Positions 42,801 to 47,422 of a stretch of DNA of 64,000 nt are shown here, in pieces. The stretch comes from Salpingoeca rosetta (lineage: Eukaryota; Protista; Choanoflagellata). The notes under the pieces are model-generated. The model saw only the letters and a list, made by a program, of their open reading frames with translations. It was not told where the DNA came from and searched no databases. Where the stretch lies: the NCBI GenBank assembly GCA_033442325.1, contig JAWQFM010000021.1, positions 680,939 through 744,938 of the forward strand, read 5' to 3'. A program made the translations under genes and the position numbers. How positions within the stretch are numbered: position 1 is the first letter of the stretch; the number at the start of each line of letters is the position of its first letter.

Positions 42801-45800
42801 TTGTGCCCAACACGCACACGATCCACTTTGGGCCTTGGGACCCTGCCGTCGGTGGCATGACGGCGCAGCTGTCGTTGGCCAACAGGGTGCGCATCGAGAG
42901 CCATGGCATGGGCTTCATCACGGAGGCGCAGGGCAAGCTGGCGCTCGCCAGCCTGTGGGCGACATGTCGCCCCGGCCGTGCTGACGAGTTTGCGGAGCAG
43001 GTCACCTGGCAGGAGGTTGCGTGCATTGCGCTTGCCCAGACATCACCTCTCACGCCCAGCGCAGGTGCTGCTGACACGCAAAGGCCAGCAGCGGCCACCT
43101 CTCACGCCGCAGTTGCAACAGGGGCGCACCCAGCAGCCGGTGGCGGCCCGTCAGATGTACGAGAGCTTGTTGCTCGGCTGCTCGGCATGGATGTTTGGGA
43201 CTTGGATGACAAGTCGCCGCTGCTCGCGTTTGGTCTTGATTCGCTGGTGGCGGTGGAGCTCCAGGGACAGCTGCAGCGGCTGTTTGGCGTCACGCTGTCC
43301 TCTGACGAGCTGCTGAGCCCGAGCTGCTCCGTCTCGTTCCTCGCTCGGGAACAGGCCGTCGCAGCAGCCCGCAAGCAGCAAGAGGCGGAGGCGGAGGCGT
43401 GGGCAAGCGAGGCAACAGCCACAGCACCCACACCAGCGCAAAGCGGCGGCATTGTGGGGTTTGTCCCACCAACGCCCACCGCCGCTGCTGCCGCCGCCAG
43501 TGGAGGTGGACTGGAGGCGGCAGACTTTGGCGTGCTGGAGTTGCTTCGCAGCCTTCCTCTAGCGCCCGCGCTGCTGTCAGACATTGACTCGCTGTTGTCC
43601 AAGCTGCGTGGGCCCACAGCCATCCCTGCTGGTCCCCTGAGCGGTGGCGGGCGCGCGGCAACCCCAACGGCCGTGCAGCTGCTGGACCGGTACGGTGCAC
43701 GGTTTGGGCGGGGGCGATCCGGGTCGCGAACACCAACACCGCAGCCGCGCACGGCCTCCCCTGCATTCAGGCCGCCACAGCTGGCGTCCAGGCTGCACCA
43801 CGTTCAGCAGCAACAGCAGCAGCTGCAGCTGCTGCAGCAGCAGGGTCAGTACCACCCATCCACATCTGATGCGGGTTCGGAAGCTGCTGTTCGCAGGCCT
43901 GGTGGTGTGCTGACAGAGCTGTCACTGAACCAGCGTGCCATGTGGTATCTGTGGAAGACCCTCCCCCAGGCAGATGCGTACAACATCTGCTACGTTGCGC
44001 GTGCGCGGCAGAAGCTGGACGTTGCTCGCTTGGAGCAGAGCCTTGCCGCTGTCGTGGACCACCACGCTTGCCTGCGACAGGTGTTTGATGAGGAGACGGG
44101 AGATCCGAGCACGCTGACGGTTGCCGATGCCCTCCGCTTCACGACCCGACCCATTCCAGGCGTGGGCCACGACCAAGATGTGGCAGCAACAACAACTGCA
44201 GCTTCGACAGCAGAAGAAACGCCGGAGCAGGCAGTGCTGCGTGCCGTGGCCCAAGTCCTGCGGCAGCAATGGTCGCTCTCTGAGGGCCCTGTTGTGGACT
44301 GCATGGTGTTTGCAAATGCCACGGAGCAGTACGTGGCCTTGTTTGTGCACCACATCTCTGCCGACTTTGTTGCGCTGCACACACTTGCGGAGGAGTGGAT
44401 GGCGCTGTACGCTGGCCGCTCTGCGCTGCCATCCGGTGCGGTGGAGCCGACATACAAGGACTTCATTGCCTGGCAGGCGCAACAGCAGGTGGCCCTGCGC
44501 GATGCCGCCCTCTCCTACTACGAGGCGGAGCTGAGCCGCCTGCCGGCAGACCGGTCCCAGTTGCCGCCCGAGCTGCGTGCGGGCGACGAGGACAGCGGTG
44601 ACGTTGACGGTGGCGGTGGCGCTGATCACGGCCACTCCGTGCAGTTCACCCTGCCACGCACGGAAGGGGATGCCCTGCTTGCCACCAGCAGGCAGCAGCA
44701 CGTGACGGTGTTTGCGCTGCTGTTGTCGCTGTATCAGCTCGTGCTGTCGCACGCGGCCAGCGAGCGTGAGCTGTGCGTGCTGTGCCCGACCGCGGGTCGC
44801 CCCGCCGAGTTTCGGCAGGTGGTGGGGCACTTCATCAACACGGTGCCCGTGCACACAACGGTGGACATGTCACGCACGCTTGCCCAGCACGTGCAAGCGG
44901 TGTTTGCAGGTGTGCAGCGCGCCATGCGCTTCCAGCACTTTTTCTTCTCCAACGTGGTGCGTGCCATGCCCCATGTGCGGCGGGCAGGTGCCAGTCAGCC
45001 CATCAGCGACGTGGCCCTCAACTTCTTTGACACCGGCGGCCTGCGCAGTCACGGCGTGCGTGGCGACAGTGGTGCGAGTGGGACGAGTGGTGCGAGTAGT
45101 GCGCTGGAAGCCTTGACTGTGGCCCAGCAGATGACTGCGTTCGCGCTGATGCTTCATGTGGTTCGCAAGGGTGACGGCGAGTGGCACGTTGAGCTGCGCT
45201 CCCGAAAGAGCACCGCGGCAGCCCGTGAGTGCCTGGCGCGTATGTCGTGGCAGCTGGAGACGGTGATGCGGCGACTCGCAGCAAACCGCGAAGGCGTGCT
45301 TGCAGGCAACATTGGGCACACCATGGTGCAGGCGGACGTGCTGAGCCTGTATCGCTTCCAGCCACAGCACGAGCACCAGCTGCTGCATGAGCTGTCGCGG
45401 CAAGGCCTGGAGCGCGGCGCATGTTCGCTGTCGGACCTGGCCGTCGCCGACGAGGACGGCGAGCTCACGGTTGCCGAGTACCTGTGGCTGGCCAACCGCG
45501 TGCATGCGTGGCTGACGGACAAGGGCCTGCCCAAGGGCACCCCCGTGGGGCTGGACATGCCCAAGTGCCGGTATCAGCTGGCTGCGGCCGTGGGTGTGCT
45601 GCAGGCTGGCTGTGCGTTTGTGCCGTTCTCGGGAACGTGGCCGGATGAGCGCACGGCGCTGGTGCGAGACAAGTGCGAGCTGCGGGTTGTGCTGTCGATT
45701 CGCGGCGCCGGTGCCCCCGCTCTGCAAGGACTGGAGCGCATCGAGCTTGACGCGTTGCACGAGGACCTCCGGACGCAGCTCGGCGCTGCGAAGGGCACGA

Positions 45801-47422
45801 GCTTGGTCGGCTCGAGCCTGGTGGCTGATGCCAAGCTGGTTGAGCCGCTGGTGCCGTTTGCGCAGGTGATGCCAGAGGACCCGGCGTACATCCTGTTTAC
45901 CTCGGGCAGCACGGGCACGCCCAAGGGGGTGGTGGTGCAGCATGGTGGCGCGTGCAACACGGTCATCAACACGGCAGACGTGTTTGGCATGTCAGCCCTG
46001 GAGCGTGGGTTCCGCGTGTTTGCCATCACGCAGCTGACGTTTGATCTTGCCATCTTTGACACGTTCTCAGCGCACATGTGCGGTGGTGCCGTGATTGTGC
46101 CAACGGACCGCATCAGCCGGGACCCCGAGGCGTGGGTGGACCTTTGCCACAAGTACCAAGTGACCACGTGGAACAGCGTGCCTGCGTTTGCGCAGATGCT
46201 GTGCGAGTACTGCGAGACGCTTGAGCTGCGTGCGCCGTCCATCCGGCACTTTATGCTCAGCGGCGACTTTGTGCCGCTGCCGCTGCCTGCACAGCTGCGC
46301 CGCGTGACCACGCCGGAGTGCGCTGTGCTCGCGCTTGGTGGGTGCACGGAGACGAGCATCTGGAACAACTTCTTTGACGTGAAGGAGGTGTGTGACGACT
46401 GGCGCACCATTCCCTACGGGTACTCCTTGCCCGGACAGCGGGTGCTTGTGCTGGACGAGAACCTGCAGCCGTGCGCCGTGGGCGAAGAAGGGCAGCTGTA
46501 CATTGCCGGCGACAGCGTGGCCATTGGCTACTACAAGTCGCCAGACCTCACGCGCCGCGCGTTTGTGCCCCTGCCAGGGTGCCTGTTGAACGAGGATGGC
46601 GAACTTGCCAGCACCGCCGGAGAGGGCGCATGGCCGGGCTCGGCTGTGCTTGGACTGAGCGAGTGGGAGAGGGTGCTGCCACGGCGGCTGTACGCGACGG
46701 GTGACCGTGTTGTGCTGCTTTCTGACGGCGCGCTGTCGCTGCTGGGGCGCATCGACTTCCAGGTGAAGATTGGCGGCTTCCGCGTGGAGCTGAATGAGAT
46801 TGACGCGCACCTGTCGCGCTTCCCCGGCATCCACACGTCATGCGTGGTGGTGATCAACAAGCAGCTGGTGGCGTACTTTTGCACCAAGTTGCCCACGACA
46901 GCCACACCAACTGCAACAACTGCAACAGCAGGGGGCGCAGAAGGAAGCGCGCAGACGCCAGCAGAGGGGCGCCCGGAATGGAGCACGGAGGCGTTGGTGG
47001 AGTTCCTGCGCACGAAATTGCCAGACTACATGGTGCCTGAGCGATACATTGAGCTTGAGTCGTTGCCGCTGAACGTGAACGGCAAGATTGACCGCAAGAT
47101 GCTGATGAAGCCCGAGTTTGCGGCTGAGGCGGCGACGGCCGGGCGCGCGCACGAGGTTGGCCCTTCGTCTGGCGTGTCTGATGCTGGGGAGCAGGTGCTT
47201 CGGGTGTGGCAGGACGTGCTTTTGTCTGGACTGCCCATCCCTGATGTGCGCGTTGTGCTGAAGGAGACCATCAAGCAGGCGGGCGGCGATTCGCTGTCGA
47301 CTGTCATGTTTGTGTCGCGGCTGCGCAAGCAAGGCTTTGCCCTCAGCTTGCAAGCGGTTGGTCCAGACACCACGCTGGAACAAGTCATTGCTCTTGTCGA
47401 ACGCAAGCAGAGCAAGGCCTGA
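16905..47422 (+). CDS. Giant intronless modular hybrid PKS-NRPS (about 10,170 aa): MT-GNAT-ACP | KS-DH-ER-KR-ACP | KS-AT-KR-ACP | KS-KR-ACP x3 | C-A-PCP; frame breaks at about 27972, about 35720 and 39725-39950
   Basis: Four abutting or overlapping ORFs (16905-28025, 27931-35766, 35660-39766, 39920-47422) whose junctions all fall in or at the start of KS domains, so the domains run on across the breaks. Catalytic motifs are listed in the domain features. Confidence 0.9.
18885..19620 (+). other. GNAT-like acyl-ACP decarboxylase of the loading module
   Basis: YRVRFAREEDLPGLLHLQEVCW, GAVYSQRI, VQLLGLNVLPEMRHKGYG, GVTRC, DPILRFHVSNGA and NYRPADTENHGHGVLIRYEL. Confidence 0.9.
19965..20200 (+). 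other. Loading ACP
   Basis: FTALGLDSMDLLDL...FQFPTPSALAAHV; phosphopantetheine motif GLDS at 20073-20084. Confidence 0.9.
20496..27330 (+). other. PKS module 1: KS-(decayed AT)-DH-ER-KR-ACP, fully reducing
   Basis: KS HTACSSS / CHGTGT / NTGHAEAAAG; no GHSxG; linker LPLYPFQ; DH HVIMQQELLP and LDAGMQ; ER SLNFRDVL, HAGAGGVG, HVGKIVL; KR GGLGALG, HAAGVTSD, YSS, YAGAN; ACP GLDSV. Confidence 0.85.
27405..31870 (+). other. PKS module 2: KS-AT(malonyl)-KR-ACP
   Basis: KS DTACSSS / EAHGTGT / NIGHLEGAAG; AT GQGSQY, GHSLG (29197-29211), HAFH (29500-29511, malonyl signature); KR GGLGQLG, HCAGVTRD, YAAAN; ACP GFDSI. Confidence 0.9.
31927..35590 (+). other. PKS module 3: KS-KR-ACP, AT-less
   Basis: KS DTACSTS / EAHGTGT / NIGHAEAAAG; short post-KS region with no AT motifs; KR GGAGKLG, CAGSYHV, YASGN; ACP GLESF. 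Confidence 0.88.
35716..39410 (+). other. PKS module 4: KS-KR-ACP, AT-less
   Basis: KS DTACSSS / HGTGT / GH; linker LPAYPFQHQRYW; KR GGSGSLG, HAAGINKD, YSLAN; ACP GVDSL. Confidence 0.88.
39467..43345 (+). other. PKS module 5: KS-KR-ACP, AT-less
   Basis: KS DTACSTS / HGTGT / GH (5' part disrupted by indels); KR GGSGALA, HTAGCTRD, YAVAN; ACP GLDSL. Confidence 0.85.
43915..47400 (+). other. Terminal NRPS module: C-A(Cys-type)-PCP, no TE or R domain
   Basis: C: LSLNQRAMWYLW, YNI, HHISADF (44348-44368), VGHFINTVP. A: YILFTSGSTGTPKG, FDLAIF, WNSVP, SGD, LGGCTETSIW, IPYG, LYATGD, QVKIGGFRVEL, LPDYMVP, NGKIDR. PCP: GGDSL (47282-47296). Stop at 47422. Confidence 0.92.

What the first reader, a model, noticed from the sequence alone, without database searches (positions are those of the whole stretch)
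45370..47110. A domain has a cysteine specificity code but follows an ordinary C domain rather than a cyclisation domain
Seen: pocket residues read by hand from FDLAIF, WNSVP, FMLSG, LGGCTETSIW and NGK give D-L-F-N-M-S-L-I-W-K. Known: this closely matches Cys-activating A domains of thiazoline-forming NRPSs (yersiniabactin/pyochelin type), which normally pair with Cy domains (DxxxxD). Here the upstream domain has HHISADF, an HHxxxD condensation motif. Inference: an uncyclised N-acyl-cysteinyl thioester with a free thiol, or a Cys analogue, is formed.
Basis: partly seen in the sequence, partly recalled or inferred. Interest (0 to 1): 0.78.

Follow-up and report, generated by a model that had tools for sequence, protein, structure and literature searches.

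The report
Cysteine-type NRPS module ending choanoflagellate PKS
The last module of a giant polyketide/peptide synthase in a choanoflagellate genome has a cysteine-type loading domain behind an ordinary, non-ring-forming condensation domain, so it probably caps the chain with an open cysteine that keeps its thiol; bacteria have the same uncommon pairing, so this is a new example of a known kind.

Summary
Observation confirmed. The pocket reads D-L-F-N-M-S-L-I-W-K, which is 9/10 identical to the solved Cys-activating PchE; the same nine residues also occur in bacterial Cy-A modules. The A domain and two orthologues (one from the choanoflagellate Hartaetosiga gracilis) sit inside a well-supported clade of A domains that mostly carry Cys-like codes.

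The upstream domain is an ordinary condensation domain with HHISADF. It scores 191 bits on a C profile against 61 on a Cy profile, lies outside a 100%-supported Cy clade, and matches only C/E domains among solved structures.

The inference of an uncyclised acyl-cysteinyl thioester with a free thiol is therefore the best reading, but it remains untested.

The pairing is a minority, not a novelty. In my bacterial sample, 64 Cys-code A domains follow Cy and 5 follow ordinary C. Romidepsin DepA is a characterised C-A(Cys)-CP module whose C domain acylates the thiol.

Both orthologues also stop right after the PCP, and dN/dS is about 0.25, so the design is conserved.

Caveat: in this assembly the line is not one ORF. 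There are seven single-base frame breaks upstream, five of them clustered in KS5. I could not check them against reads.

The scan had already noted this same stretch from an overlapping window (s1-444886), not from other DNA.

The parts
15363..16115 (-). Stand-alone YbaK/ProX-superfamily (tRNA_edit) gene, transcribed away from the synthase start at 16905. It is linked to the synthase by adjacency only.
   Evidence: Pfam PF04073 E 5e-25. It falls below the curated YbaK cut-off (55 vs 153 bits). It is 55-66% identical to a ~164-aa bacterial family whose bacterial neighbourhoods hold no NRPS/PKS genes.
16905..39766 (+). Upstream assembly line: an AprA-type starter (AprA_N, WH_AprA, MT2-like) with ACP; KS1-ER-KR-ACP; KS2-AT-KR-ACP; KS3-KR-ACP; KS4-KR-ACP; and the first half of KS5. 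In this assembly it is read in three frames.
   Evidence: Pfam scans. Frame changes lie near 27.97 kb and 35.7 kb.
39758..39950 (+). Broken stretch of KS5. It has five single-base indels (39758, 39806, 39855, 39921, 39950) relative to the near-identical KS3, with in-frame stops at 39764-39766 and about 39860-39862.
   Evidence: Three-frame translation. DNA alignment of KS5, KS3 and KS4.
43154..43315 (+). ACP of the last PKS module, the donor carrier for the condensation domain.
   Evidence: Pfam PP-binding, residues 1079-1132 of the ORF.
43916..45208 (+). Ordinary condensation (C) domain with the active-site motif HHISADF at 44348-44368.
   Evidence: Pfam PF00668 E 2.7e-43. Solved-structure hits are only C/E domains. 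It lies outside the Cy clade. It scores 191 bits on a C profile vs 61 bits on a Cy profile.
45437..47104 (+). Adenylation domain with pocket D-L-F-N-M-S-L-I-W-K. The contributing motifs are FDLAIF 46040, WNSVP 46169, FMLSG 46250, LGGCTETSIW 46334 and NGK 47078.
47210..47419 (+). Terminal PCP (GGDSLS at 47282), followed directly by the stop codon at 47420-47422.
   Evidence: Translation. The orthologues end at the same place. No ORF with a release domain lies downstream.

Best explanation
This is the last module, C-A-PCP, of a hybrid polyketide/non-ribosomal peptide assembly line in a choanoflagellate genome. Earlier notes of this scan name the organism as Salpingoeca rosetta; I did not verify the species.

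Proposed mechanism:
1. The A domain descends from the bacterial lineage that activates L-cysteine for thiazoline-forming modules. It most likely still loads L-Cys onto the terminal PCP (inferred).
2. The domain in front of it is an ordinary amide-forming condensation domain, not a cyclisation domain (shown at sequence level).
3. The beta-hydroxyacyl polyketide on the preceding ACP is therefore joined to the cysteine without ring closure. This gives an acyl-cysteinyl-S-PCP, most likely N-acyl, that keeps a free thiol (inferred).
4. No thioesterase, reductase or terminal C domain follows the PCP, so release must be spontaneous or carried out by a separate enzyme (inferred).
For: - Pocket code: DLFNMSLIWK is 9/10 to PchE and 8/10 to BmdB, both solved Cys-activating domains. 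The same nine residues occur in the bacterial Cy-A modules P0106 and P0122. It fits the published Cys signature cluster D-L-Y/W-N-L/M-S-L/M-I/V-W-K (PMC12283262).
- Phylogeny: the window, P0001 and P0025 form a 100%-supported group inside a 99%-supported clade of 61 A domains, 46 of which have Cys-like codes.
- C domain motifs: HHISADF, plus the C1, C2, C4 and C5 motifs, are readable.
- C domain relatives: 35 solved-structure hits are all C or E domains. No Cy domain appears, although PchE, BmdB and FmoA3 are the best A-domain hits.
- C versus Cy: the Cy domains form one clade (SH-aLRT 100) that excludes the window's domain. The window scores 191 bits on the C profile and 61 bits on the Cy profile.
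- Conservation: the P0001/P0141 orthologue keeps HHISADF and every pocket residue. Identity is 75% in the A core, 62% in C and 30% in the linker. dN/dS is 0.24-0.27.
- Terminal PCP: both orthologues also end just after the PCP.
- Release domain: there is no thioesterase match on this contig.
- Activation: a phosphopantetheinyl transferase hit exists elsewhere in the genome.
Against: - No biochemical test was possible, and specificity codes are predictions. FmoA3, a close solved relative, activates alpha-methyl-serine, though with a clearly different code (DAYNVSSCW).
- The C domain is very divergent, at most 28% identical to any bacterial hit. It has F where the HHxxxDG glycine normally sits.
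- A characterised C-A(Cys)-CP module, romidepsin DepA, acylates the thiol rather than the amine.
- In this assembly the upstream line has seven single-base frame breaks, and KS5 contains two stops.
Confidence: 0.6

Rival explanations
1. The locus is decaying in this organism. The frame breaks in KS2, in the ACP-KS4 linker and in KS5 are real, so the C-A-PCP module is no longer fed, or not translated, and no cysteine-capped product is made.
For: There are seven 1-nt frame breaks. Five lie within 200 bp of KS5, just before its active-site cysteine, and two in-frame stops result. No expression evidence was obtained.
Against: The 2,519-codon frame holding KR-ACP-C-A-PCP is intact with all core motifs. 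dN/dS against the orthologue is about 0.25. The indels at 39921 and 39950 look like a mixed KS3/KS4 consensus inside a 96-97% identical repeat, which is what a mis-assembled repeat would give.
Confidence: 0.2
2. The A domain activates something other than L-cysteine, such as a small polar residue (Ser, Ala, 2,3-diaminopropionate) or a cysteine analogue (cysteate or methyl-cysteine).
For: Two pocket positions differ from the textbook Cys code: F for Y at position 239 and M for L at position 299. The same A-domain clade also holds non-Cys codes such as DMFNFGVLW, DLWMIGLIL and FmoA3's alpha-methyl-serine code. The H. gracilis orthologue has a further variant, DLWNYSLIW.
Against: F239 is found in PchE itself. 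M299 occurs in 27 Cy-coupled bacterial domains, and the full nine-residue string recurs in Cy-A modules, which need a beta-thiol to cyclise. S301, L322, I330 and W331 are all kept.
Confidence: 0.12
3. The C domain transfers the polyketide onto the cysteine thiol (S-acylation), as the DepA C domain does in romidepsin assembly. This gives an S-acyl-cysteinyl-PCP that may then shift to nitrogen.
For: A DepA C-A-CP tridomain was reconstituted in vitro: cysteinylation was followed by S-octanoylation by its C domain (bioRxiv 10.1101/2025.03.13.642940). The window's C domain is atypical, with a long branch and HHISADF in place of HHxxxDG.
Against: I could not compare the domain with the DepA sequence. 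The default chemistry of HHxxxD C domains is amide formation. An S-acyl cysteine with a free amine tends to rearrange to the N-acyl form (general chemistry, my own knowledge).
Confidence: 0.1
4. A thiazoline is still formed, either by this C domain acting as a cryptic cyclase or by a separate cyclodehydratase.
For: The A domain's lineage is overwhelmingly Cy-coupled: 64 Cy against 5 C in my sample.
Against: There is no DxxxxD motif. The domain lies outside the Cy clade and scores 61 bits on the Cy profile, below the 104-bit median of ordinary C domains on that profile. The genome search found only this one condensation-family domain.
Confidence: 0.04

Closest known systems
PchE / PchF (pyochelin), HMWP2 (yersiniabactin) and BmdB (bacillamide): Cy-A(Cys)-PCP modules
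   Same: The A-domain lineage and pocket are shared. PchE reads DLFNLSLIW and BmdB reads DLYNLSLIW, against DLFNMSLIW here. The GGxTExxIW and SGD(W/F)(I/V)PLPLP motifs are also shared.
   Different: Those A domains follow a DxxxxD cyclisation domain and give thiazolines. Here the partner is an HHxxxD condensation domain fed by a PKS ACP.
Romidepsin DepA module 1 (C-A-CP loading L-Cys); also thiocoraline and echinomycin-type C-A(Cys) modules (these two from my own knowledge, not checked here)
   Same: A non-cyclising C domain is paired with a Cys-loading A domain, and the cysteine stays open-chain with its sulfur available.
   Different: DepA sits at the start of its line, its C domain acylates sulfur, and the chain continues into PKS modules. 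Here the module is last and is followed by nothing. No sequence comparison with DepA was possible.
Uncharacterised bacterial NRPSs P0022, P0080, P0097, P0105 and P0129
   Same: Each has a Cys-like code directly behind an HHxxxDG C domain that falls on the ordinary-C side of the tree. P0022, P0080 and P0097 read DLYNLSLIW; P0105 and P0129 read DLYNFSLVW.
   Different: They are bacterial and of unknown product. Their C domains are at most about 28% identical to the window's.
Apratoxin AprA / GphF / SxtA-type methyltransferase starter modules
   Same: The first 1,100 residues of this line match AprA_N, WH_AprA and the AprA MT2-like domain.
   Different: This concerns the other end of the synthase. 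Apratoxin's cysteine is cyclised by a Cy domain (my own knowledge).

Membership tests
Cys-activating A domains of the Cy-associated lineage | Ten-residue pocket D-L-(Y/F/W)-N-(L/M)-S-(L/M)-(I/V)-W-K | tested here: met
   The pocket reads DLFNMSLIWK and is 9/10 to PchE. The published cluster is in PMC12283262.
Cys-activating A domains of the Cy-associated lineage | Placement inside the clade in a tree of A domains | tested here: met
   It lies inside a 99%-supported clade of 61 A domains, 46 with Cys-like codes. This is a quick tree and the stem is long.
Cys-activating A domains of the Cy-associated lineage | Intact catalytic core motifs A3-A10 | tested here: met
   SGSTGTPKG, FDLAIFD, GGCTETSIW, GQLYIAGD, YATGDRV, GRIDFQVKIGGFRVEL, LPDYMVP and NGKIDR are all readable.
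Cys-activating A domains of the Cy-associated lineage | Measured adenylation and loading of L-cysteine | not testable with these tools
   This needs an enzyme assay.
Thiazoline-forming module (Cy-A-PCP) | Upstream cyclisation domain with a DxxxxDxxS motif that groups with Cy domains | tested here: not met
   The motif is HHISADF. The domain lies outside the 100%-supported Cy clade, scores 61 bits on the Cy profile vs 191 bits on the C profile, and no Cy domain appears among the solved-structure hits.
Ordinary NRPS condensation domain | PF00668 fold with an HHxxxDG active site | tested here: met
   Pfam E 2.7e-43. HHxxxD is present and conserved in the orthologue. The trailing G is replaced by F.
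Ordinary NRPS condensation domain | Subtype (LCL, DCL, starter or PKS-hybrid) and N- versus S-acylation | tested here: inconclusive
   The best solved relatives are mixed (AB3403, TomB, TycC, LgrA). The domain sits on a long isolated branch. NaPDoS was not available.
Canonical terminal module with cis release | TE, R or terminal C domain after the last carrier | tested here: not met
   The stop codon follows 12 codons after the last conserved PCP residues. No downstream ORF has such a domain. There is no PF00975 hit on this contig. Two orthologues show the same ending.

The most novel reading that the evidence does not exclude
Choanoflagellates share a conserved, release-domain-less PKS-NRPS that makes a polyhydroxy-acyl cysteine, a thiol-bearing lipid-like metabolite. 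The neighbouring YbaK-like deacylase frees it from the PCP by the thiol-assisted chemistry that YbaK uses on Cys-tRNA. This would be an unrecognised release route and the first assigned natural product of the closest relatives of animals.
Probability: 0.07. Interest if true: 0.75.

Novelty: new member of a known kind. Interest (0 to 1): 0.42.

Why it matters
I found no paper describing a PKS-NRPS product from a choanoflagellate. Two surveys only mention in passing that choanoflagellates have assembly-line PKSs.

This module is the only condensation-domain hit in the genome, and its design is kept in at least three choanoflagellate-type sequences. The prediction that the product ends in an open cysteine with a reactive thiol gives a concrete handle, thiol-reactive probes and mass shifts, for finding that metabolite.

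For NRPS enzymology it is one more example of a Cy-lineage Cys A domain re-paired with an ordinary C domain. That is useful for module-swapping rules, but it is not a new principle.

Tried and rejected
I therefore have no read-level check of expression, of the 3' end or of the frame breaks. One local script used the whole window file as a BLAST subject for a KS5 query taken from 39300-40700.
- The top solved-structure hit, LgrA, first suggested a Gly-type domain. I rejected this because its score sums two A domains (82 and 60 bits each). On the pocket-bearing core, PchE, FmoA3 and BmdB win.
- An exact-product look-up of the window's ORF found nothing.
- The lactacystin paper turned out to be irrelevant, since the cysteine there is added spontaneously.
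- I tested the idea of the YbaK-like neighbour as a dedicated release enzyme by looking at bacterial neighbourhoods of its closest relatives. They hold no NRPS/PKS genes, so only adjacency supports the idea.
- Searches for a thioesterase on this contig found none.
- I did not run the large representative-protein search, because the claim does not rest on absence of relatives.
- NRPS specificity predictors and NaPDoS were not available.
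Full report
**Setting**

The window is G000:C21:680939-744938 of a 55.4-Mb, 68-contig eukaryotic genome. Earlier notes of this scan name it as the choanoflagellate Salpingoeca rosetta. I did not verify the species. The only named close relative of the module comes from the choanoflagellate Hartaetosiga gracilis, which fits.

Between 16.9 and 47.4 kb the + strand carries a giant PKS-NRPS:
- An AprA-type methyltransferase starter with ACP.
- Five KS modules. Only KS2 has an AT; module 1 has ER and KR; modules 2-5 have KR.
- A final C-A-PCP module.

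The finding concerns that last module, which lies in an intact 2,519-codon open frame ending at 47422.

A script located the motifs: HHISADF at 44348, FDLAIF at 46040, WNSVP at 46169, FMLSG at 46250, LGGCTETSIW at 46334, NGKIDR at 47078 and the PCP serine motif GGDSLS at 47282.

HMMER alignments to solved structures place them column for column against two Cys-activating domains:
- PchE, which reads DLFNLSLIW.
- BmdB, which reads DLYNLSLIW.

The related FmoA3, which activates alpha-methyl-serine, reads DAYNVSSCW. The window's code DLFNMSLIW(K) is therefore 9/10 to PchE.

Two points support the code reading:
- F at position 239 is PchE's own residue.
- M at position 299 occurs in 27 Cy-coupled bacterial domains in my sample, and the whole nine-residue string recurs in bacterial Cy-A modules.

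A published survey describes the Cys signature cluster as D-L-Y/W-N-L/M-S-L/M-I/V-W-K (PMC12283262).

The first solved-structure search put LgrA on top. That was an artefact of summing two A domains.

**Where the A domain belongs**

I built a tree of 107 A-domain cores (quick method). The window, P0001 and P0025 form a 100%-supported group on a long stem. That group sits inside a 99%-supported clade of 61 domains, of which 46 carry Cys-like codes. The rest are derived codes, mostly seen behind Cy domains. Gly, Ser, Ala, Thr and other codes fall outside.

**The upstream domain is not a cyclisation domain**

- Pfam calls it Condensation (E 2.7e-43).
- Against solved structures it hits 35 C or E domains, including AB3403, TomB, TycC, LgrA and Txo. 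It hits none of the Cy domains of PchE, BmdB or FmoA3, even though those proteins are the best A-domain hits.
- In a tree of 57 upstream domains, the 22 Cy domains form one clade (SH-aLRT 100). The window and P0001 lie on the ordinary-C side, again on a long branch.
- A profile built from the 33 ordinary C domains scores the window at 191 bits; a profile from the 22 Cy domains scores it at 61 bits. Ordinary C domains have a median of 104 bits on the Cy profile.

The domain is divergent, at most 28% identical to any bacterial hit. It has F in place of the usual glycine after HHxxxD. I could not assign a subtype.

**How unusual is the pairing?**

Among bacterial A domains in my hit set with a strict Cys-like code and a recognisable upstream domain, 64 follow Cy and 5 follow an HHxxxDG C domain: P0022, P0080, P0097, P0105 and P0129. 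All five fall on the C side of the tree.

The sample is biased towards relatives of this A domain. It still shows that the pairing is a minority, not unique.

A characterised case exists. In romidepsin assembly the DepA C-A-CP tridomain loads L-Cys, and its C domain transfers octanoyl onto the thiol (bioRxiv 10.1101/2025.03.13.642940). That keeps S-acylation open as a rival to N-acylation here.

**Conservation**

P0001/P0141 come from metagenome assemblies and are 62-66% identical. They keep HHISADF, every pocket residue and the PCP motif, and they stop at the same place after the PCP.

Identity by segment:

| Segment | Identity |
|---|---|
| A core | 75% |
| C domain | 62% |
| PCP | 60% |
| ACP-C linker | 30% |

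dN/dS by segment, with dS near saturation:

| Segment | dN/dS |
|---|---|
| C domain | 0.25 |
| A core | 0.24 |
| Whole C-A-PCP | 0.27 |

The H. gracilis transcript product P0025 is 40% identical. It has the code DLWNYSLIW and also ends right after the PCP.

The Cys-type pocket, the ordinary C domain and the lack of a release domain are therefore a conserved design, not an accident of one genome. No thioesterase match lies on this contig. Downstream of 47422 there is only repeat-rich non-coding DNA. A phosphopantetheinyl transferase hit exists elsewhere in the genome.

**Caveat on the upstream line**

Earlier notes call the gene a 30.5-kb intron-free ORF. In this assembly it is not one ORF.
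- The frame shifts by +1 inside KS2 near 27.97 kb, at a GGG run.
- It shifts by +1 again in the ACP-KS4 linker near 35.7 kb.
- KS5 carries five single-base indels at 39758, 39806, 39855, 39921 and 39950 relative to its 96%-identical paralogue KS3. These give stops at 39764 and about 39860, just before the KS active-site cysteine.

The indels at 39921 and 39950 look like a blend of the KS3 and KS4 versions, as a mis-assembled near-identical repeat would give. Real decay is not excluded.

**Release**

The gene at 15363-16115 (-) is transcribed away from the synthase and encodes a YbaK/ProX-superfamily domain. YbaK is known as a Cys-tRNA(Pro) deacylase, so the neighbour is a tempting candidate for freeing a cysteinyl thioester.

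The evidence for this is thin:
- It is below the curated YbaK cut-off.
- It is 55-66% identical to a widespread ~164-aa bacterial family.
- Two bacterial neighbourhoods of that family show transporters and a sugar kinase, not NRPS or PKS genes.

Only adjacency supports the idea.

**Verdict**

The kind of module is already known from bacteria. What is new is its host and its conserved place at the end of an uncharacterised choanoflagellate assembly line.

I found no paper on this synthase. Two surveys mention choanoflagellate assembly-line PKSs only in passing.

Noticed in passing
window 27960-27990, 35680-35730, 39758-39950: The synthase is not a single open frame in this assembly. There are seven single-base frame breaks, five of them clustered in the first half of KS5 with two in-frame stops. 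Two of the KS5 indels look like a mixed KS3/KS4 consensus, so this may be repeat mis-assembly rather than decay.
   Followed up: partly
window 31914-33112, 36152-36923, 39458-40660: KS3, KS4 and KS5 share 96-97% identical DNA over 0.8-1.2 kb. KS5 follows KS3 in its 5' part and KS4 from about 40058 on. This is a gene-conversion-like mosaic of the kind described as GRINS in assembly-line PKSs.
   Followed up: partly
window 15363-16115 (-): This single-exon YbaK/ProX-superfamily gene is about 60% identical to a bacterial ~164-aa family and carries an added ~85-residue Q-rich N-terminal extension. It lies head-to-head with the synthase and looks like a second bacterial-type gene at this locus.
   Followed up: partly
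window 46600-46700 and 46930-47020 (A domain): Two low-complexity inserts lie in the A domain: one between motifs A6 and A7, and a T/A/P-rich one between A8 and A9. They vary in length among the three orthologues. They appear to be eukaryote-style loop expansions in a bacterial-type domain.
   Followed up: no
window 23205-25244, 36860-38299, 40820-42289: Stretches of 480-680 residues between KS and KR in modules 1, 4 and 5 give no Pfam match beyond the KS C-terminal extension (module 3's linker was only partly scanned). Only module 2 has a recognisable AT. These may be degenerate AT or DH remnants.
   Followed up: no
window 6725-11935 (-): RIC1-family gene pieces (second beta-propeller and C-terminal solenoid) lie upstream, interrupted by CA/TG microsatellite-rich introns. 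This appears to be an ordinary host gene flanking the GC-richer synthase (52-58% vs 60-65% GC).
   Followed up: no
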